A DNA stretch of 64,000 bases from Saccostrea cucullata (Eukaryota): contig NW_026937128.1 in NCBI RefSeq assembly GCF_032062105.1, positions 1 through 64,000 on the forward strand, given 5' to 3'. The notes beneath the pieces are model-generated. The model was given only the letters and a program-made list of their open reading frames with translations, did not search any database and had not been told where the DNA came from. Positions within the stretch are counted from its first letter, which is position 1, and each line of letters opens with the position of its first letter. This document shows positions 1,464 to 15,001 of the stretch, one piece after another. Both the position numbers and the translations under genes were made by a program.

Positions 1464-2523
1464 CTGGATGTATGCGGTTTATGCGGTTTACGCCTTAAAA
1501 CCTCCCATATCTATCCCCATACCAGACCAGAAGCTCTTCACCCGGCTCTACGTCTCGTGACGTCATATAAAAGATGATGCCCTTGCACTTGATAGGAATG
1601 ACATTTTCCTGTGTATATTTGGCGGGAGAATTTACGAATCGTAACCAGTTACTGCAGGCTGGATCTTCTGCATCTATGTTGTAGCTACCATCGGTACCCT
1701 GCTTATCTACCTTTGAAAACAATAAGATCCTAATTGTTAAGAATTAATTTTGGTTCAAAATGTTTTATATATTTTATCTTGAAGACAATAAGATCCACAT
1801 TGATCAAAATAACTTTAAAGTAATGAATATTTAGGGATTAAAAGATCCTAAAAAATAAAACATTGTGAGAGTGTTGTATTAGCAATGCTAGTCCCCTACC
1901 GGCAAGTGTAATCTGGTGCCCTCTAAAATTGAAAATTTTATAAGAAATCATTGAAGTAGAAAAAAAAATGAAAATTTTTCTATAACTCATCAAGGTAAAG
2001 CAACATACACCAGAAATACTTTCAACGTCTGCAAGCGTTTAGATAAAAGGCAGGAAATCACTGAAGGTTATAAAAATGAAAACTTGATCAGCAACTTATC
2101 CATTCATAAATCAGCTAAAAATTTGCCAGGGTTTACATGTAGAAGAAAAAGTGTACATAACCATGTTGAAGAGACAGAGGGACAGCTAGACGGACAGGCG
2201 GACAGGCGTGGAACGAAAACAGAGGAATCCTTTAGTCATCTGGTTTCACCGGCAGGGAACTAGAAAGATGTAACTAAATATGTAACTTCATTTCGTTTTC
2301 ATTTTGTTTTATTCTCTATGTGATTTTCCTGCCATGAATAAAAGTCCTCCTTCTTGTCTACCGTGTGAATAAGTCCTTCATAAACACCGAGGATCGTGAA
2401 CTTCGGAACAAAGGTCTCTGCCCATGCGCCCATCCCCGCTCCCGGAAGTGACGAAGATTTAATGGCAAATCCTGGTGGCGTGGTCAGATTAGCTCTCTGG
2501 TGTGGCAGGGAACCTAGAGGAAT
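1464..2523 (-). pseudogene. PR/SET-domain methyltransferase (PRDM7/9-like), two exons (2523-2329, 1710-1464), apparently inactivated
   Basis: Motifs IKSSSLPGAGMGAW, GVYEG, IDAED..SNWLRFVNS, IFY...RDVEPGEELLVWYG..Y. In-frame TAA at 1495-1497 before the exon's GT donor (1463). The upstream exon donor reads CAG|GA instead of CAG|GT (2328-2327). Confidence 0.8.
1862..2262 (+). mobile_element. Degenerate HINE-like element in the intron of the SET pseudogene
   Basis: tagtcccctaccgg near the 5' end, its inverted copy ccggcagggaacta at the 3' end, and a (GGACA)n tract at ~2173-2207. Confidence 0.5.
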
Positions 2524-3203
2524 CTTACATGTACAAGATAATGTCAAGGACGCGTAATCTTATGTATAATCTTAAATTAACTGCCAGTATGTCATTTATA
2601 TTATGACAAAGTCAGTGAAATTCTACTGACAGGAAATTAAATGGTAGAGGTCTAGCTTTAAGGAAGCTGTAAACACTGCACACAAAAGAGTTCCTAATGC
2701 CTCCCATCAGTGACCTGTGATCTACGGACCAGTTTAGTGGATTTTGTGTGATTTGTTAAAGTATTGTCTGCATAGATATTTAAAATATGATATTATTGGC
2801 AATTGTATCATGTATAAGGTGAAAAATCTAAACAATGCGCTTTTAATTTTACTGTATATACCTTATTATTAGGAATGTGTTCATATATAGAACTTTTTAC
2901 ACCATGCTTAATGAAATCTCCACAAATTGGGAAGAGAAAGAAAAAAATTTTAAAATTGTCCTTACCTTGCATTCATAGTATTTTTACAAGATATAAAATG
3001 TATTTCAAACTTCGTTTTTTGACAATATCAAGACTACGTGTATTGTTAAAAACAATATCTTTTTTTGTATAACAAAGGTTTAAAGTGTCTATCCAAGATT
3101 TTTACTTTTACTGATCAAGTGTGTATCTGCTCATATATAATTATCATTTAATACGTGCCAGATATTATACCTGAGGCTTTCTTACATAAGAGACATGGAC
3201 TTT

Positions 3204-3633
3204 ATTTAAGAAATGGGATATCATTTTTAGAGTTTCATTGGGGTATGATATGAAGTCGGTCACGTGATCAAATTCTATAACGCCCGTAGGAGTTATGGTA
3301 GATTTGATCACGTACCGACTTAATGTCATAACCTATTAAGAATCTAAAGAATGATATTTTATTTCTTATATTTATATTTTACGTTTTCATTCATGTTAAA
3401 AAGAAATATAGGCATTATATATACCTTGATTTTGAAATGCAACGTAAAGTATCTACGACGTCAAGTGACGCCATAGTCAGAACTTTCCAAATAGCTCGTG
3501 CATTAAGCTTTCCATACGCAAGAATGTCTGATCATGTGACCAACTGCATGTAATTGAAAATTGAATTTCAATTTTATTAGCATTTTTATACAACTGTATA
3601 AGGAAAGAAATCAGCAAATGTAAATATAAATAT
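3204..3633 (+). mobile_element. Hairpin-plus-tail non-autonomous element (Crypton-like palindromic repeat)
   Basis: Imperfect palindrome 3207-3368, immediately followed by tatttatatttttac whose inverted copy gtaaatataaata ends the element at ~3632. Confidence 0.55.
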
Positions 3634-3965
3634 ATATAGGATCTTCCATGATTTGTAGTTGGATATGATTTTTATCCAACGAGTTGTGTGATTTTTATCC
3701 CCGAGCCTTGGCGAGGGGATAAAAACACACAACGAGTTGGATAAAAATCATATCTAACTACAAATCATGGGAGATTCTTTTTATTCCATGTTTAATGCTT
3801 CACAACCGATGTTATACACTGTTTTATATAGCACGCCACTTTATTTTACTTCATCACGCTAACGCAAAAACCATTGTGACGTCATAACTGCACGTAAGTT
3901 TTGGATATGAAAAATTTATCAAATGGGTCATATACACGGGATAAAGGGGTAAACATGGGATAAAT
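3634..3965 (+). mobile_element. Hairpin-plus-tail non-autonomous element (Crypton-like palindromic repeat)
   Basis: Near-perfect palindrome 3638-3778 centred on cgagccttggcgag, then tttattccatgttta, inverted at 3950-3964 (taaacatgggataaa). Confidence 0.65.
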
Positions 3966-4489
3966 ATGTATATCTGATGTCTCAATTCAAAAGAAATGCC
4001 TTTTATCTTATGCATCCTTTATATGAGAAACAAGCTCTTAATCTGAAATATAGTTATATGAAATATATTATTTGAAAAATAAGCTTAATATTTCAAAGAT
4101 ATACAAATGTTTAATACAATCTATTATTCTCAGGAAATTAAGATTTACTACCATCATTCGGTTTAAAAAATGTTTTAAATTTCCGAAAACTTCACACTCA
4201 AGTTTGCACCTATTCAAGAGAAAAAGAAGTTGGGATATTAAAAAAATAATTGTCATACGACAAAAATAAAACGACTAATGGTAAAACACTAACCACTTTC
4301 GAATGAGGGCATTCTGCAAATAAGGAACTATTTAAGCTTTTTAATTTACGAAAACAAGACAGGAAAGGAAGAGCTGCTCCAAAAGAAAACTACCTCATTG
4401 ATTTTTTTTAAACAAGGTTCGAAGATAATGAAAATATGAGATTGTACTAGTAAACACGCGCAAGTTCATACAAGTTAGACAATTTGATA

Positions 4490-4750
4490 GAGTTCCTATT
4501 AATGTAAAAGAGTTTCTGTTAATGTAATGAAGTGTCTGTTAACGTAACAGAGTTCCTGTTCATGTAATAGAGTCTCTGTCAGTGTTATAGAATTTAGAGT
4601 TTCTGTTAATGTAATAGAGTTCATTTTTATGTAATAGAGTTCTTGTAAATGTGATAGAGGTTCTGTTTAAGTAATAAAGTTGAAAGATTCTATTAATGAA
4701 ACCGAGTCTGTGTAATAGAATATACTAGAGTTACTATTAATGTAATTGAG
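4490..4750. repeat. Degenerate ~20-bp tandem repeat (gttaatgtaatagagttcct)
   Basis: About a dozen diverged copies visible. Confidence 0.7.
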
Positions 4751-7700
4751 TTATCAGACACTAATAAAACAGGAGCCCTAATAAGTGTTTTTAATCGATC
4801 AATGAAATACCTCGCCTACTCCAAATATTAATTAAACACATTAAAAAACCAACTCTGACAAGCACAACATTCTGGAATTAACATCCACTAGAGGGTTTTT
4901 TTATATACTTTAAGCAAAACTAAAGAGCTGTTTTCAGTGTAAATATGTGTAAGTAGTGTACCACAAAAATAACAAATTATAGGTTGGATGCATAATAATT
5001 AAGATTTCAGTTAACAAGATGGAGTAAAAGGGGTCGTAAAACGGAGCCAGGACACTATGCTTAAACGGAAACATGTTTTTCTTATGACAAATTAGTAAAG
5101 TAATTTTCAAAAAGTATCATTTACAAGCTAAAATCTAGTATATTAAGTTTCTTCAACAAGATATATATAAAAATGATTCATTCTATTCTATATAAAATGA
5201 TTTTCAACGATGAAGCTAAAATATCCTACGGTTTTGACAATGAAAAAACTTAATGTATTATTAATATCAAGAGTCTTTCAGAAAAGGTGTAAATAATATT
5301 TTTTTTATATACGGTCTCCAGTATAGGTGAATAAGTCTATGCATGGCCTAACGAAATTGAGCATGATGTCACGGTAAAACTGTACAGACGAACCTAGGCG
5401 AATAGATAATTATTTTCTTTCATACACTTATACAAAAGTAATTTCTCATTAATATTATAAACAAAAATATGAATATGTAGCTTATCTTTGTATTATAACA
5501 CAATTTAAATGTAGAATTAAAGCCATCTTGATCTCGCTGAACTGACTGAGATGCCGTCATATACTAGTCTGACATGCCATTTCTCTGTACTTAAAATAAA
5601 GATCAAGCAATTATTGAAGCTTGTAATTATGAAAATCAAAATAACATAAGCGTGATCTGACTAAACGTGAGTCACATTTTTTAATGCATTTATCAATATT
5701 TTACAGTAATTACAGTTAAACTGAAAACGAATAGGTCTCAGATAAAGCAGCTGTACTGCATATTTATACATAAACAAACTACAATCACAGGGACAATCCC
5801 TCGATAACGTTCAACGATATCCGGTTAACAATACATTATGGCTTTTTAGACACATGTAGCTATTGTTCCTACTATTCAGAAAAATGGTGGAAGCCATTTG
5901 TATTCTGAAGTTTTTTTTCCGTAGATTTCCTTTTTTTCAATATAGACAATGTTAAGGAACGAGGCTTAGCAACAGACGACTAAAATTTATAGCGAGCGCA
6001 GCGAGCCTCGCGAAGCGACGCTCGTCACTGCGAGCTCTTAAAGCAACGCCTGTGCGAAGAGAAAATTCGGACTGCTGCACATTCATTCGATAGAATTTTT
6101 TGATGCCGTAATTTCGACCCACAATGCATCACTTGTTTTAGCTACGTTCCCGCGAGAATAACAGCAAATGTTCAACAAAAAGTTTACTCGCCTTTACTTT
6201 ATGGATATATATTTAATATATATAGAAAACGAAACGTTCTTCATTAACTTTCAGCACTTTTCAAGCTTTTTCTTGGTATATTGCAACTTACATACGACGT
6301 CATGTGACGTCAGAGTCTAAACGCACCAAATGTCACGTGCGGTTTGACGAGCCCGATCTAAATCAAAACAACAAAAGAGTTTGCGCTCGCTCTAACGGTC
6401 ATACCGTCAACATATTATAATTCACGAGCGTGGAATTATTGTTCTCATCAATCTTCGCATTCAGGAATTTTTTTAATGAAAAAAAAAATGTCAATTTTAT
6501 AGTAAACATTCATCAGTATATCGTTGAATGTTTACGATCGTCGTAGCGGTTTTTTCCTTCTAATATTAAATATGTAAGGTGATAAATAGTTGATATGATT
6601 GAAATTGCATTGTTCAAATTCAGTAGGGATTCTATTCATACATATGCTTTTAAATTAAAACTTGTGTTAATTAAAATTATATTTACATATTTAATACAGT
6701 TTTTGTAGGAATATTTTAAGACGTGTGGGCAATTCTAACCTAGCTGAGTGTTTTCTGCAGATAACGTTCCAAGCTGTAGGAGATAGTTTAAGGAAGAAAT
6801 GAATCTTTTGCATGGCAGTATGAAAACAAATAAAAAAAGAAGACTTTAAACCAAATACACATGTCCGTTTTAATACATCTACAGTAATTCTTTTTTAGAG
6901 AAATGAGATAGATTGGAGGAGGGAGAAAGAGTTCACTACAAAAACAAAATGTCTGGTATTTCTCAAAAGCTCACAATTCATGAAAGACTTACAGGTGAAT
7001 TTTTATCTTGGATTCATTAATTATAAAATAAACATGCTCATTGTAAGAAGTTTTATTGTCACAAAATTGCCTAATGTTGTTTTTTATTCCCTTATTCTCC
7101 AGAGTTCAAATTGCAATAATATAAGTGATTCTCAACATGAAAACAATCTAGTCTATGCTTTTGTATAAAAAACATGAACACAGAACCATCTCATCTGCTT
7201 CCTCTCTGTAATGTGAAGATACCTGATTTTATGAGTCATTGTATATAAGAGAAATGACAAAATACCATTTTCTGCTTTATTTAAATTTCTTTGATTGCTT
7301 GCAAATTGCACACGATCATGAATTGCATTTATACATGAATAAAGTAAATCTAGAGCGAAATATTCGTATATAGAATTGACCAAAAAAAAATGGAATATTT
7401 TATCTCAGATATAATAGATTAGGCAATGATTTGAATAAAACTGTGTGCCTTTTTTCTTAAGGGGAAGAAAACAATAATCAGCAATGATCAGATTTTATAA
7501 ATGTTTATGAATGATCCACCAAAGCTCTATCTCATAAAATTTGTGTCAAAATCTTCCCTGACTCTGACTCAAGTTAGGTTAATTGTTAACATGAGATTTC
7601 TTAATAGTCAATTTAGGAAATTATTTTTTTTTTCTCATTTCCCAATTACAGGTGATTGAACATGGCATCTGGAGACATATAATACATCAAGATGGTTTCG

Positions 7701-8977: not shown

Positions 8978-9429
8978 TACTATTATGAATCAAAATTTAG
9001 TTTTAGGTCGATTATTATTCGGTAAAGCGTTAACTAATACAGATAGAAATTATATTTAAAATATATATATATTTGATATATTTTTGAAAAGTTAATTTCA
9101 GTTCTCTAGCGTCAATTGATTTGGTTAAAGAATTACTCCATTTTCTATAACATAACTTGCCTACGTCACAAAGAATAACGTCTAACACGTATTACTTCAC
9201 TGAACGTTGCTTTTAAAATATGCAAAATTTCAAGCCCCTTCCCGGAGGATAAATTATCTTCATGTCTACATTGAAATTAAATTCTAAGGAATGAAGTATA
9301 TTTCAAGCTATGCCATACGATGTAAACTAATTAGTGGCAAGCTTTTTAAACTCTTTTATAAGCCTCTTCGCATCCCGGTTTATAATGCATAAACTGTATC
9401 ACTTTAGATTTTATGTGAATGTTTAAATC

Positions 9430-11746
9430 TTAAGATCTGTATTTGTATGACTTTATCTTTAGATCTAAATGTGTATGTTTATATCTTTAGATCTATATGT
9501 GTATGTTTATATCTTTAGATCTATATGTGTATGTTTATATCTTTAGATCAATATGTGTATGTTTATATCTTTAAATATATAGGTATGTTTATTAGTATTC
9601 TTTAGATCTATATGTGTATGTTTATATCTTTAGATCTAAATGTGTATGTTTATATCTTTAGATCTATGTGTGTCTGTTTATATCTTTAGATCTATATGTG
9701 TATGTTTATATCTTTAGATCTATATGTGTATGTTCATATCTTTAGATCTATGTATGTATGTATATATATTTAGATCTATATGTGTATGTTTTTATCTTTT
9801 CATCTATGTGTGTATGTTTATTTCTTTAGATCAATATATGTGTTTATATCTTTAGATCTATATGTGTATGTTTATATCTTCAGATCTATATGTGTATGTT
9901 TATATCTTTAGATCTATATGTATATGTTTATATCTTTAGATCTATATGTGTATGTTTATATCTTTAGATCAATAAGTGTATGTTTATATCTTTAGATCTA
10001 TATGTGTATGTTTATATCTTTAGATCAATAAGTGTATGTTTATATCTTTAGATCTATATGTGTATGTTTACCTCTTTAGATCAATATATGTATGTTTATA
10101 TCTTTAGACGCGTGGTGACAAGGTTTCGTGTGTTATGGAAATTTATATAAGGAAAAATACACGGAATGTAAATATATGTGTATGTTTATATCTTTAGATC
10201 TATGTGTGTCTGTTTATATCTTTAGACCTATATAGGTATGTTTACTTAGTATATCTTAAGATCTATATGTGTATGTTTATATCTTTAGATCTAAATGTGT
10301 ATGTTTATATCTTTAGATCTATGTGTGTCTGTTTATATCTTTAGATCTATATGTGTATGTTTATATCTTTAGATCTATATGTGTATGTTTTTATCTTTAG
10401 ATCTATGTATGTATGTATATATATATTTAGATCTATATGTGTATGTTTATATCTTTAGATCTATGTGTGTTTGTTTATATCTTTAGATCTATATCTGTGA
10501 GTTTATATCTTTAGATCTATATGTGTATGTTTATATCTTTAGATCTATATGTGTATGTTTATATCTTTAGATCTATATGTGTATGTTTATATCTTTAGAT
10601 CTATATGTGTATGTTTATATCTTTAGATCAATAAGTGTATGTTTATATCTTTAGAACTATGCGTGTATGTTTATATCTTTAGATCTATATGTGTATGTTT
10701 ATATCTTTAGATCAATATGTGTATGTTTTTTTTAATCTTTAGATCTATATGTGTATGTTTATATCTTTAGATATATGTGTGTATGTTTATATCATTTGAT
10801 ATATATGTGTATGTTTATATCTTTAGATCTATATGTGTATGTTTGTATCTTTAGATCTATATGTGTATGTTTGTATCTTTAGATCAATATATGTGTTTAT
10901 ATCTTTAGATCTATATGTGTATGTTTATATCTTTAGATATATATGTGTATGTTTATTTCCTCAGATCTACATGTGTATATTTATATCTTTAGATCTATAT
11001 GTGTATGTTTATATCTTTAGATCTATATGTGTATGTTTTTATCTTAAGATCTATTTAAGCATTGAATTCATATTTTTGACTGTCTTTGGTCCTATAACAC
11101 ATCTGGCCGTGCCGAAAAATTGGATACCGCGCGTTAGCGCGGTATGATAAATCTCTCGGCACGGCCAGGTGTGTTATAGGACCGAAGACAGCCAAAAATA
11201 TGAATTTAATGCTTACATTTACATTCTCTAATTTTCCTACTTCATAATTGCTTATTTCGTTAATCTTTAATGTGTATTTAACGCCCTTCAAAATGACGCG
11301 GTTATTAGACGTAAGAGCCGTTTCTGGTGTTTGTGAAGTCAGATGACGTTGCAAAGTTAAATAACGCAAACAAACATTGCGAGGAAAAAAAGTGACAAAT
11401 TAATTTTAAGCTCACATTTGTAGTATTTTTACGTTAATTTAACAGGATTATAGTTTTTAATTAAATTGAGTCAAAATATTGTACATTTTGGTGTTCCCAG
11501 ATTATATAAAATGCATATAGTTTCTACTGTGTATTCTAACGCGCGGTGACAAGGTTTCGCGTGTGTTATGGAAATTTGAATGTCGTGGATTTCTAATGAA
11601 TTTCATAAGGAAAAATACACGGAATGTAAATATATGTGTATGTTTATATCTTTAGATCTATGTGTGTATGTTTATATCTTTAGATCTATATGTGTATGTT
11701 TATATCTTTAGATCTGTATTTGTATGTTTATATCTTTAGATCTACA
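9430..11746. repeat. 28-bp minisatellite (agatctatatgtgtatgtttatatcttt)n, interrupted at 11053-11632
   Basis: Clear 28-bp periodicity over dozens of copies. Confidence 0.97.
11053..11632 (+). mobile_element. Hairpin-plus-tail non-autonomous element inserted into the 28-bp minisatellite
   Basis: Palindrome 11056-11215 (apex ataccgcgc-gtta-gcgcggtat), then atttacattc, inverted at 11622-11631; satellite phase resumes on both sides. Confidence 0.75.
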
Positions 11747-14506
11747 TGGAACTGTGTCTGTCATTCTCCACGGCATGGTTTCATAGTCATAGAGAGTCTT
11801 AGTCTAGAAGGCCGAGAGCGATCGAGCGCGAGAATACACTGGGAAAATATCATTTGAAAGCATCCCTCAGCTCTTTTGTCTTCTCTTTTTCTTTCTCTAA
11901 TTTATAAAAAGTTTGGAATTTTGCTTTTCCAAATTTAAATTTGACATTTTATTTCAACACAATGTGTTTTTATGTCAGTAAATCTATGTTAAGTATTGAA
12001 TGCGAAAAATTCCACTATAATAAGCAGATCCAAATTTTACATTTATCAATGAAGAATAACTGTATTTATAAAAGCACAAAAGGCAGTCTTATATTTAGAG
12101 AGCTCATGAATATATATTGAAATAGAAAAAATATACAAAAATTACAAAATTAAAAAAAAAAAAAAAATAGCGGATCCAAATTTCAAATTCGAATAACTGT
12201 TGTTTATAAGAGCTCAATGAGACAGTCTTATATTTCGAGAGTTCAAATACATGTTTATATATTAAAATAAAAAAAAAATTCTAATTAAACAGAAGATATT
12301 TGTCGAAGAAACATTTGATACAAACTACTTATTGTTAATAATGCGGTGATCTACACACATTTGTGTTGATATTAGTTAGATCCTCCCCCTTTTTTGTCAG
12401 GATCATTACACATTTGTGTTGATATAAATTAGATATTCCCCCTTTTCTTTTGTGGATCAACACATATTTGTGTTCATATCAGTAAGATCTTCCCAATTTC
12501 TTTTGTGGATCAACACACATTTGTGTTGATATTAATTAGATCCTCACCATATCTTGTCAGGATCAACACACATTTGTGTTGATATTAATTAGATCCTTCC
12601 CCTTTCTTCTCTGGATTAACACACATTTGTGTTGATACAGTACAGGCAATGCGGATCTAGTATAAGACCGCGTCCCCTCCGCAGTGTATTAATCCTTTCC
12701 GCGTTACACCGTCGCGGGTTTTGATCGCGGTGCTACCTAAGACCGTGTTTACACCGCTGCGGGGCCACCTACCATTATTCTGCAGCTTAGATGATGTAAC
12801 CTGTAAAGTCTTGTCGATTTTTAATCGTGTTGAAAGGGGGGTAGCCATTTAAGATTATGACCACATTAATATCAATACCATTTAGTGGATTTTTTTAAAA
12901 ATTCATTTTAAGTTTTATCAAATTCTTAAATTAATTTTTTTTTTACAATAGTCACTCAAAATAAATTCGCAAACGCGTCTGTTAACAATTATATTGGATG
13001 AAATATAGTCGTATAATTTATCGCATATATTTATTTATAAAATAATATTTATTTATAACACCTATAATCTCACCACAAATGATCTTCAAATTGCAAAATA
13101 ATTAGGATGAATTTTAGAATTTAACGAACGAATGCCATGTCGCTTCTTTTTATATACACCGTAATCCAGTGCTCACGATTAGCCCGTACAGTTGCCGTTA
13201 CATGTAGATATGCGTTTATTTATCTGCGAGATTCTATAACAGCCATTGGTTTTATTTTTTTTTAATGTACATATGTCTGTTGTAAATAATAGCATGAAAA
13301 ACGATAATAGAGATACATAATAGCAAACTTAAACCAAAAATACATGTGTACACTGTTCCTTTACTATGCGCTACACTGTAAGACTATGAACTAAATATCG
13401 ACATGATTTTTGGGGGGTGGGGGTTATAAGTCATTCTATTTTATAGCTTTTATTTTGCTGTTCTGCTTTGTGGTCTTTTCGAAAATTATAAAAGTCATGT
13501 CTGTGAAAATGATGAACAAATTTTACGTATCGTCAATCGGAAAGGCTGACTCTTCTATATAAGCATATTAATATTGACCCTAAAATAATTTGAATACACA
13601 GCACAGAAATTAACTTATTTTAATCAGCAAGTTGCCATACATCAAGTTTTCAGGTGTCTGACTGTGTAACTGGTCTATACCCTTAACGAGATACCTGTAA
13701 TACCTTCACATTACGTAATCTTACATCATGAAAAAATACTGACGAACAATAAAGTTAATAAATGTCTTGGAAACGACCATATCAAGCTGTTAGTTTAGTT
13801 AAATATTGTGTGTTTACCTGTGTTTTCCGTAAGGTAAACTCGCATATTAATCAGAAAAATTCCACTAATGGTCAATAAACTGACATATCACCGAAAGCCA
13901 GATCTACATGTATCTGTTCACGGCAACGATTGCTATGGAATTAAACAAAAACTGATCCATAAGCAATTTCATTTAAAAAATATAGTTTTATTCGATACAC
14001 TTGGGAAATCAATGATATTTATACGGATCAAAACGAGGAAAACTATTTTGCATGTGCCTCATTTCTCTCTCTCTCTCTCTCTCTCTCTCAATCGATCGAT
14101 CGATCGATCAATCGAAATCTACTAACTGGTACAGGTATAAATAAAATAAACATGTAAGTATGAAGGTGAAGAAGCGGTATTTTTTCTTGATCTCTTGTAT
14201 AAAGTTCACATGTAACTGCAAAGTTCATCGAATGTTATTTTTTTAAAGATTAATTGTTCATTTTTTATTCCAAATGAATGCTGAAAATTGTTTATCGAAA
14301 CTCACACAGTCTGAGTTAGCATTATTAAAGTTCGCATGTAGTATGAATAATTATTTGTTACAATACCCACCAAAAATTCTAGTATTTAATTTTGTTTCTT
14401 GTTAGACTCTCAATGACGTAAAAAAATAACCAATGGCTGAGTTCCGCAATGTCTTATTTCTGGAGTTATCTCTCTTGAAAAATCGCTAGATGTCGCCAAC
14501 ACATTG

Positions 14507-14895: not shown

Positions 14896-15001
14896 TAATC
14901 CGAGATTCCTCTGACTCTAACCCCCGCTTTTATTTTATGACGTTTGTCCGCACATGTCATAAAATAAAAGCAGGGGTTAGAGTCAGGGGAATCTCGGATT
15001 A
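14896..15001. mobile_element. 106-bp foldback MITE with 9-bp TSD (Mutator-like)
   Basis: ~46-bp arms taatccgagattc...ttttatgac / gtcataaaa...gaatctcggatta; perfect TSD tgtctttat at 14887-14895 and 15002-15010. Confidence 0.88.

What the first reader, a model, noticed from the sequence alone, without database searches (positions are those of the whole stretch)
3204..3965. Shared 'self-splinting' three-site architecture in four sequence-unrelated elements (also 11053-11632 and 63105-63837)
Seen: each element is A-(long hairpin)-A'B-(spacer of ~150-550 bp)-B'. The internal A'B site is therefore the reverse complement of the element's own joined ends. For 11053, joined ends rc AATGCTTATATTTACATTC vs internal AATGCTTACATTTACATTC. 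For 3204, ATTTCTTATATTTATATTTAC vs ATTTCTTATATTTATATTTTTAC. For 3634, GATCCTATTTATCCC vs GATTCTTTTTATTCC. For 63105, the join reproduces internal AATCATATAATAAAACAATTATTGCT. Ends fall in TA-rich cores with no conventional TIR/TSD pair. Known: DIRS1 retroelements use an internal complementary region in this way to form a circle that a tyrosine recombinase integrates; Cryptons are tyrosine-recombinase DNA elements of unresolved mechanism. Inference: a class of non-autonomous elements whose single strand folds to juxtapose its two ends for circularisation, with structure conserved rather than sequence. The individual families may already be catalogued; the shared mechanistic logic is the candidate novelty.
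Basis: partly seen in the sequence, partly recalled or inferred. Interest (0 to 1): 0.78.

Follow-up and report, generated by a model that had tools for sequence, protein, structure and literature searches.

The report
Giant-hairpin Helentron-type parasite transposons in oyster
The four elements are real, high-copy, non-coding transposons, and their "three-site" layout is the published signature of Helitron2/Helentron rolling-circle elements, so this is a known kind of element with an unusually long hairpin, not a new class.

Summary
All four elements are whole mobile units, each with about 1,600 to 2,400 first-look candidates in this 1.17 Gb oyster genome. They are not nested MITEs.

In each, a terminal 10-15 nt repeat pairs with a site directly next to a 135-163 nt terminal hairpin. 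Single-strand folding therefore puts the two ends side by side. The pairing is far beyond chance in three families. The fourth (3206-3627) has 11 of 12 pairs and shares its ends with the 11055-11633 family.

Insertions are precise and have no target-site duplication. Head-to-tail junctions exist in the assembly.

This layout (5' subterminal repeat, 3' subterminal repeat immediately upstream of a 3' hairpin) defines Helitron2/Helentron elements and their non-autonomous HINE/DINE-1 forms (PMC3627910, PMC4067079). Pairing of the end repeats was already proposed there to set the replication endpoint.

The genome holds hundreds of intact Helentron genes. Nothing links the elements to DIRS or Crypton.

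Differences from published HINEs:
- The hairpin is about ten times longer.
- The target is W|RTA rather than T|T.
- No central tandem repeats.

No autonomous partner with the same ends was found, because sampling was cut short. The scan had already noted giant-hairpin HINEs elsewhere in this genome.

The parts
3206..3627 (-). F2: whole non-autonomous element (422 bp), conventional 5' end at 3627 and 3' hairpin end at 3206
   Evidence: 2403 first-look candidates; copies span window 3202-3635. Ends TTAAG... and ...GTAAATAT fixed by 29 flank alignments.
3616..3627 (-). F2 5' subterminal repeat (begins ATATTTACATT)
   Evidence: 11 of 12 complementary to 3369-3380. The same motif forms the F1 5' end.
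3369..3380 (-). F2 3' subterminal repeat, directly abutting the hairpin
3207..3368 (-). F2 terminal hairpin (162 nt), 1 nt from the 3' end
   Evidence: 94.5% of hairpin pair cells are paired across 29 copies, and 6 of 6 double changes are compensatory.
3630..3964 (-). F3: whole non-autonomous element (335 bp), lying 2 nt from the F2 5' end
   Evidence: 1589 candidates; copies span 3630-3964. Contig loose ends at 3630 in four runs and at 3964. Flank alignments.
3950..3964 (-). F3 5' subterminal repeat (15 nt, begins TTTATCCCATG)
   Evidence: Pairs with 3780-3794 in the minimum-energy fold. 0 of 20000 shuffles reach it.
3780..3794 (-). F3 3' subterminal repeat, 4 nt from the hairpin
3641..3775 (-). 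F3 terminal hairpin (135 nt), followed by an 11-nt AT-rich 3' tail at 3630-3640
   Evidence: (I1).
11055..11633 (-). F1: whole non-autonomous element (579 bp), inserted in a 28-30 bp satellite
   Evidence: 1694 candidates; copies span 11052-11633. 33 flank alignments. Joined flanks restore the satellite unit with no gap.
11622..11631 (-). F1 5' subterminal repeat, 2 nt from the 5' end
   Evidence: Pairs with 11217-11226 in the fold. 10 of 20000 shuffles reach it.
11217..11226 (-). F1 3' subterminal repeat, 0-1 nt from the hairpin
11056..11215 (-). F1 terminal hairpin (160 nt), 1 nt from the 3' end
   Evidence: 8 of 9 double changes are compensatory; 0 of 1000 shuffles reach that.
63108..63837 (+). 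F4: whole non-autonomous element (about 730 bp), hairpin at the right end
   Evidence: 2093 candidates; copies span 63109-63838. 15 flank alignments. Variable number of T at the 5' end.
63109..63122 (+). F4 5' subterminal repeat (14 nt)
   Evidence: Pairs with 63672-63685. 0 of 20000 shuffles reach it.
63672..63685 (+). F4 3' subterminal repeat, directly abutting the hairpin
   Evidence: (I5).
63686..63829 (+). F4 terminal hairpin (about 144 nt), followed by a 7-8 nt 3' tail to 63837

Best explanation
The four elements are non-autonomous members of the Helitron2/Helentron group of rolling-circle transposons. They are HINE / DINE-1-like elements in an oyster genome and are moved in trans by Helentron Rep/helicase/endonuclease proteins.

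Likely mechanism (all enzymatic steps are inferred):
1. The HUH nuclease nicks one strand at the 5' boundary and stays attached to it.
2. The helicase peels off that strand.
3. When the 3' subterminal repeat emerges, it pairs with the 5' subterminal repeat, and the long palindrome next to it snaps into a hairpin.
4. The two helices stack. The 3' cleavage site now lies beside the enzyme-bound 5' end. This marks the endpoint and favours joining into a single-stranded circle.
5. The circle is inserted at W|RTA without a target-site duplication.

Shown here: the architecture, whole-unit mobility, precise TSD-free insertion, the target motif, head-to-tail junctions, and abundant intact Helentron genes.

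Inferred: every enzymatic step, the strand polarity, and the role of the fold. I put about 0.4 on the end pairing actually acting in termination or end joining.
For: Whole-unit families:
- The 40 best-scoring copies of each family cover hairpin plus tail.

Architecture:
- It matches the published definition: 5' repeat 0-2 nt from the end, 3' repeat 0-4 nt upstream of a terminal hairpin. This holds in the folds of consensus and window copies and in the texts of PMC3627910 and PMC4067079.

Precise insertion, no TSD:
- Joined flanks of nested copies align without gap to uninterrupted host repeats.
- The cases are F1 in F1 (90 of 90 nt), F2 in F1, F2 in F3, and F1 in a satellite.

Junctions:
- Head-to-tail junctions F1-F1, F4-F4 and a heterologous F1-F2 junction with zero spacer.
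- F3 and F2 lie 2 nt apart in the window.

Hairpin upkeep:
- 14 of 15 double changes in the F1 and F2 hairpins are compensatory.

Enzyme supply:
- At least 471 Helitron_like_N candidates, with open frames up to 2848 aa.
- Domains OTU, DUF6570, Rep, PIF1 and Exo_endo_phos.
- Closest proteins are in Saccostrea, Ostrea and Crassostrea.
- DUF6570 is reported as an HLE2 marker (PMC11417382).

Other:
- The elements are non-coding and have no Rfam match.
- Joined ends have been detected experimentally for an HLE2 element in Fusarium (PMC5148889).
Against: - No autonomous copy carrying these ends was found. Six sampled Helentron loci and two from other sources show no giant hairpin and none of the terminal motifs.
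- The usual T|T target is not seen in F1-F3. TT across the site occurs in 3 of 33, 0 of 26 and 0 of 15 insertions; the preference is W|RTA.
- The hairpins are 135-163 nt, against stems of about 5-20 bp in published HINEs.
- No central tandem repeat or microsatellite is present.
- The F2 end pairing is weak: AT-only, one mismatch, not in the minimum-energy fold.
Confidence: 0.82

Rival explanations
1. These are Helentron-type elements, but the end pairing does no splinting. The subterminal repeats would be double-strand binding sites for the transposase. The hairpin would be only a terminator or a by-product of palindrome expansion. The side-by-side ends in the fold would then be incidental.
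For: The F2 pairing is weak and absent from the minimum-energy fold. Between 2 and 11 nt remain unpaired at the joint, depending on the family. In published HINEs the palindrome lies 8-35 bp from the 3' end, so exact abutment at the terminus is not universal.
Against: The 3' repeat abuts the hairpin within 0-4 nt in all four families, even though three of them have unrelated repeat sequences. Bao and Jurka report compensatory changes that keep the repeats paired.
Confidence: 0.45
2. The elements are non-autonomous and move as circles integrated by a tyrosine recombinase. This is the reader's analogy: DIRS-like use of an internal complementary region, or Crypton-like.
For: Formally, the internal site is complementary to the joined ends. 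There is no TSD. Many F1 insertions show TAT on both sides.
Against: - The element-side TAT is invariant, but the host-side triplet varies.
- The L030 insertion keeps host TAC|AAT around a complete element, so no shared crossover core is needed.
- No recombinase or reverse-transcriptase remnant is present.
- The architecture is already explained by HLE2, and Helentron genes abound.
Confidence: 0.03
3. The hairpin and the tail are two independent MITEs with ordinary terminal inverted repeats that happen to be nested or adjacent.
For: Taken alone, each hairpin looks like a MITE with long inverted repeats, and B...B' looks like a second pair of repeats.
Against: The best-scoring copies in four families all carry hairpin plus tail as one unit with common outer ends. 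Empty sites show one precise insertion of the whole unit and no TSD.
Confidence: 0.01
4. The complementarity between the ends and the internal site is chance in AT-rich DNA.
For: For F2 alone, 3134 of 20000 shuffles reach the observed run.
Against: For F1, F3 and F4 the figures are 10, 0 and 0 of 20000 shuffles, and no interior window matches as well. The pairing is kept in 96-99% of cells across copies.
Confidence: 0.01

Closest known systems
Helitron2 / HLE2 elements with asymmetric terminal inverted repeats (Bao and Jurka 2013, PMC3627910)
   Same: - 5' repeat 0-2 nt from the 5' end.
- 3' repeat immediately upstream of a 3' hairpin.
- No TSD, non-autonomous derivatives, compensatory upkeep.
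- The idea that 5'/3' repeat pairing on the displaced strand marks the endpoint.
   Different: - The published 3' repeat sits about 20-30 bp from the 3' end; here it is 140-175 nt away because the hairpin is giant.
- The 5' hairpin is weak or absent here.
- The target is W|RTA, not T-rich.
HINE / DINE-1 non-autonomous Helentrons (Thomas et al. 2014, PMC4067079; Cg_HINE of Crassostrea gigas, PMC7492417)
   Same: - Subterminal repeats of 11-15 bp and a 3' palindrome.
- No TSD, and high copy number relative to autonomous Helentrons.
- A variable number of T at the 5' end (F4).
- Oyster host with Rep/helicase/endonuclease partners.
   Different: - Published palindromes are short (5-10 bp stems in the mite; the right flank is about 60 bp in C. 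gigas).
- Published elements usually carry central tandem repeats or a microsatellite and prefer TT.
- These four have 61-77 bp stems, no central repeats, and mostly RTA on the 3' side of the target.
FoHeli1/2 of Fusarium oxysporum (PMC5148889)
   Same: - HLE2 termini.
- A target that is not T|T (between TNAT and A).
- Insertions a few bp from another copy's end.
- Joined-end product detected by PCR.
   Different: Those are fungal, autonomous elements of 5-6 kb with short hairpins at both ends.
IS200/IS605 single-strand HUH transposons (recalled from general knowledge, not tested here)
   Same: - Works alike: structured ends.
- No TSD.
- Insertion next to a short fixed motif that resembles the element's own cleavage site.
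   Different: - Those are prokaryotic, with a Y1 transposase and hairpins at both ends.
- There is no membership claim.
DIRS1 internal complementary region
   Same: An internal site complementary to the joined termini.
   Different: DIRS elements are retroelements that encode reverse transcriptase and a tyrosine recombinase. Nothing of that kind is linked to these families.

Membership tests
HLE2 (Helitron2/Helentron) non-autonomous element = HINE | 5' subterminal/asymmetric inverted repeat within 0-4 nt of the 5' end | tested here: met
   The repeat starts at nt 1-3 in all four consensus sequences.
HLE2 (Helitron2/Helentron) non-autonomous element = HINE | 3' repeat subterminal, immediately upstream of a 3' hairpin | tested here: met
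   The gap between repeat and hairpin is 0, 0, 4 and 0 nt in F1, F2, F3 and F4.
HLE2 (Helitron2/Helentron) non-autonomous element = HINE | Palindrome/stem-loop close to the 3' terminus | tested here: met
   The hairpin ends 1, 1, 11 and 7 nt from the 3' end. Its length of 135-163 nt is far above published values.
HLE2 (Helitron2/Helentron) non-autonomous element = HINE | No target-site duplication | tested here: met
   Four independent nested empty sites align without gap or duplication.
HLE2 (Helitron2/Helentron) non-autonomous element = HINE | Insertion between T and T | tested here: not met
   TT across the site: F1 3 of 33, F2 0 of 26, F3 0 of 15, F4 5 of 14. F1-F3 prefer W|RTA. Other HLE2 members also deviate (TNAT|A in FoHeli), so this is a usual feature and not a strict one.
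HLE2 (Helitron2/Helentron) non-autonomous element = HINE | Autonomous partner encoding Rep/helicase (plus endonuclease) with the same termini | tested here: inconclusive
   Helentron genes are abundant and intact. None of the 8 loci examined carries these ends.
HLE2 (Helitron2/Helentron) non-autonomous element = HINE | 5' hairpin or inverted repeat involving the 5' repeat | tested here: inconclusive
   Only a 5-bp stem in the F2 fold. Nothing convincing in the others.
HLE2 (Helitron2/Helentron) non-autonomous element = HINE | Central tandem repeats or microsatellite (frequent, not obligatory) | tested here: not met
   None is seen in the four consensus sequences. Tandem repeats do occur downstream of the autonomous ORFs.
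Canonical Helitron (HLE1) | 5' TC, 3' CTRR, short hairpin about 11 bp from the 3' end, insertion between A and T | tested here: not met
   5' ends are ATATTT or TTTAT. 3' ends are CTTAA, an AT-rich tail, or TATTAT.
MITE of a cut-and-paste (DDE) superfamily | Terminal inverted repeats at both outer ends, flanked by a TSD | tested here: not met
   The outer ends are not inverted repeats of each other, and there is no TSD.
DIRS-like retroelement | Derived from an element encoding reverse transcriptase and a tyrosine recombinase, with an internal complementary region | tested here: not met
   An internal complementary site exists formally. There is no coding remnant and no link to such genes. Whether DIRS genes exist elsewhere in the genome was not searched.
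Crypton | Tyrosine-recombinase gene; integration by crossover in a short sequence shared with the target | tested here: not met
   The L030 insertion shows no shared core: host TAC|AAT is kept around a complete element. The genome was not searched for recombinase genes.

The most novel reading that the evidence does not exclude
In these oyster families the Helentron end structure is taken to an extreme. The giant palindrome abuts both the 3' repeat and the terminus, so the displaced strand forms a nicked, coaxially stacked duplex. That duplex would act as a built-in splint for the Rep-catalysed joining of the ends.

The nuclease would also cut 5' of the same RTA motif at the element's own start (ATA...) and at targets. 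Resident element boundaries would then be preferred landing sites. That would explain heterologous head-to-tail stacks such as F3-F2 and F1-F2.
Probability: 0.25. Interest if true: 0.55.

Novelty: new member of a known kind. Interest (0 to 1): 0.3.

Why it matters
The transposition chemistry of Helentron/Helitron2 elements has not been worked out biochemically in the papers read here. These four families give clean, abundant, short substrates of 335-730 bp. Their ends are exactly defined, their target motif is clear, and their hairpin is exceptionally stable.

This makes the 2013 proposal, that pairing of the end repeats sets the endpoint, directly testable. The families also matter for oyster genome annotation. 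Together they show roughly 7,800 first-look candidates, which are not copy numbers. Repeat finders would easily split them into a foldback MITE plus an unrelated tail.

Tried and rejected
1. Nested-MITE reading. Rejected by whole-unit copies and empty sites.
2. Chance. Rejected for three families.
3. A 3-bp TAT duplication for F1. Rejected because the element-side TAT is invariant while the host side varies, and the L030 case has host TAC.
4. Search for the autonomous partner:
   - Six Helentron loci from this genome were fetched, but only 10 kb each was delivered.
   - One Ostrea edulis locus and one ENA contig were also examined.
   - None shows a long hairpin or the terminal motifs.
   - A generic search for repeats flanking the ORF was swamped by tandem repeats.
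5. Reads. Only low-coverage contig runs holding small shares of the stretch were on offer. Laying them confirmed the repeat boundaries (loose ends at 3630 and 3964). It gave no empty allele and no usable circle junction. Junction reads could not be told apart from the tandem arrays in the assembly anyway.
6. Rfam scan of the window: no match.
7. Not done: a search of this genome for tyrosine-recombinase genes. Their presence would not discriminate between the readings.

Full report
**What is there**

The window is AT-rich eukaryotic DNA (about 32% G+C). It comes from a 1.17 Gb assembly of 23,869 contigs. The closest proteins of its transposon genes are in the oysters Saccostrea, Ostrea and Crassostrea.

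The three regions hold four elements. Each has a long near-perfect inverted repeat at one end, followed by a tail whose far end is complementary to the sequence just inside the hairpin.

**Are they units or nested pieces?**

Searching the whole genome gave these first-look candidate counts:
- F1 (11055-11633): 1694
- F2 (3206-3627): 2403
- F3 (3630-3964): 1589
- F4 (63108-63837): 2093

In every family the 40 scored copies cover hairpin plus tail with common outer limits.

Flank alignments fix the ends. On the strand with the hairpin at the 3' end:
- F1 runs from ATATTTACATTC to CAATGCTTAA.
- F2 runs from ATATTTACATTT to ATTTCTTAA.
- F3 runs from TTTATCCCATG to an AT-rich 11-nt tail after the hairpin.
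- F4 runs from a variable run of T plus ATTATATGATTG to GTATAnTAT.

Contigs from public runs laid on 2400-4800 pile up only between about 3204 and 3965. They fray into unlike flanks at 3630 and 3964.

**Precise insertion, no duplication**

Joining the 45-nt flanks of each copy and searching the loci in hand found uninterrupted counterparts for four nested insertions:
- An F1 copy inside another F1: 90 of 90 nt, 100% identical to the intact copy in L005.
- An F2 copy inside an F1.
- An F2 copy inside an F3.
- The window's F1 copy inside a 28-30 bp satellite.

None shows a gap or a duplication.

The L030 case has host TAC|AAT on the two sides of a complete element. This rules out both a TAT duplication and a crossover in a shared core.

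On the conventional strand the target is W|RTA for F1-F3. Position +2 is T in 28 of 33, 23 of 26 and 15 of 15 insertions. TT across the site is rare. F4 shows TT in 5 of 14.

**The fold**

With DNA parameters, the consensus single strands fold as follows:
- F1: nt 2-12 pair with 400-410, and the hairpin is 411-570.
- F3: nt 1-15 pair with 171-185, and the hairpin is 190-324.
- F4: nt 1-13 pair with 556-568, and the hairpin is 569-713.
- F2: the hairpin is 252-414. The 11-of-12 AT-only end pairing next to it is not in the minimum-energy structure.

The window copies behave the same way.

The end helix and the hairpin therefore abut within 0-4 nt. The 5' end comes to lie beside the 3' end, with 1-11 nt unpaired at the joint.

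Shuffling the site next to the hairpin reaches the observed run in 10 (F1), 0 (F3) and 0 (F4) of 20000 trials, and in 3134 for F2.

Across copies, 96-99% of end-repeat cells are paired in F1, F3 and F4, and 89.5% in F2. In the F1 and F2 hairpins, 14 of 15 two-sided changes keep the pair. These cells are few and partly shared by descent.

**Not wholly unrelated**

F1 and F2 share their first 30 nt and the junction region at about 80% identity. F3 and F4 both start with TTTAT. All four tails hold a TGACGT-type motif, and TGACGTCACA occurs in F1, F2 and F3. That 10-mer occurs three times in the window against 0.06 expected.

**Joined ends exist as DNA**

Head-to-tail junctions are present for F1-F1 (L027, L029). 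They are also present for F4-F4-F4 (L086), where the joint is shortened. There is a heterologous F1-to-F2 junction with zero spacer (L035). In the window, F3 ends 2 nt from the start of F2.

**What it is**

The layout is the published definition of Helitron2/Helentron elements.

Bao and Jurka 2013 (PMC3627910):
- The 5' asymmetric terminal inverted repeat lies 0-2 bp from the end.
- The 3' one lies immediately upstream of the hairpin.
- Compensatory mutations are noted.
- Pairing of the two repeats is proposed to determine the replication endpoint.

Thomas et al. 2014 describe the same structure for Helentrons and their non-autonomous HINE/DINE-1 forms, without TSD (PMC4067079). The structure is also reported in Crassostrea gigas (PMC7492417). 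Joined ends of an HLE2 element were amplified in Fusarium, where the target is TNAT|A rather than T|T (PMC5148889).

This genome holds at least 471 Helitron_like_N candidates. All 150 scored exceed the Pfam cut-off, and many lie in open frames of 2100-2848 aa. Sampled ORFs carry OTU, DUF6570, Rep, PIF1 helicase and a C-terminal Exo_endo_phos endonuclease, which is the Helentron make-up. DUF6570 is reported as an HLE2 marker (PMC11417382).

The four elements themselves are non-coding and match no Rfam family.

**What could not be shown**

I did not find an autonomous copy with these ends. The six Helentron loci fetched were delivered as 10 kb halves. They show tandem repeats downstream of the ORF, but no giant hairpin and none of the terminal motifs. 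A locus from Ostrea edulis and an ENA contig gave nothing either. Membership therefore rests on architecture, insertion behaviour and the presence of the enzyme family, not on a demonstrated partner.

**How it differs from described HINEs**

- The hairpin has stems of 61-77 bp, against 5-10 bp in mites and a 60-bp right flank in C. gigas.
- The target is W|RTA.
- There are no central tandem repeats.

The first three bases of F1 and F2 (ATA) equal the preferred 3' side of the target. This would make element boundaries good landing sites and fits the stacked junctions. That is inference.

**Verdict**

They belong to a known class, however, and their end-pairing logic was published in 2013. The DIRS/Crypton link is unsupported.

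Earlier notes of this scan on other pieces of the same genome reached the same classification. I treated them as leads and tested the classification independently.

Noticed in passing
window 9400-11750: Long array of a 28-30 bp satellite (unit resembling tatctttagatctatatgtgtatgttta), interrupted by the F1 insertion. The joined flanks restore a unit exactly.
   Followed up: partly
window 3875-3884, 6303-6312, 54766-54775; consensus of F1, F2, F3: The palindromic CRE-like motif TGACGTCA(CA) sits in the non-hairpin tail of F1, F2 and F3, and a half-site with CACGTG sits in F4. The 10-mer occurs 3 times in the window against 0.06 expected. It could be a promoter element or a protein-binding site shared by the families.
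   Followed up: partly
window 63838-63854 versus 63660-63685: In the window's F4 copy the 3' flank continues the palindrome. CACTGATAAA, 6 nt past the family's 3' end, is complementary to the sequence just upstream of the 3' repeat. Other copies have unrelated flanks. It may be a fragment of an inverted copy or a fold-back extension.
   Followed up: no
window 3627-3630; L035 near 1491; L063: Different families are stacked head to tail: F3 ends 2 nt from the F2 start in the window, and an F1 3' end abuts an F2 5' end with zero spacer in L035. This suggests insertion at the boundaries of resident elements.
   Followed up: partly
L087 332-2517; L092 1-1626; L089 4392-5358: Autonomous Helentron loci carry tandem repeat arrays outside the ORF: a period of about 436 bp downstream of the ORF in L087/L092 and about 59 bp upstream of the ORF in L089. 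This matches the satellite-carrying Helentrons described in oysters.
   Followed up: no
window 14896-15001: Another long hairpin (46-nt arms, 14-nt loop, 42% G+C). It lies inside the region that another note of the scan describes as a THAP-DDE transposon, and it is not one of the four families.
   Followed up: no
G000 C7222:10513-11383 and C10217:20496-21366: Two other contigs carry the whole F2-F3 locus with its flanks at 99% identity. They are probably haplotigs or a recent segmental duplication.
   Followed up: no
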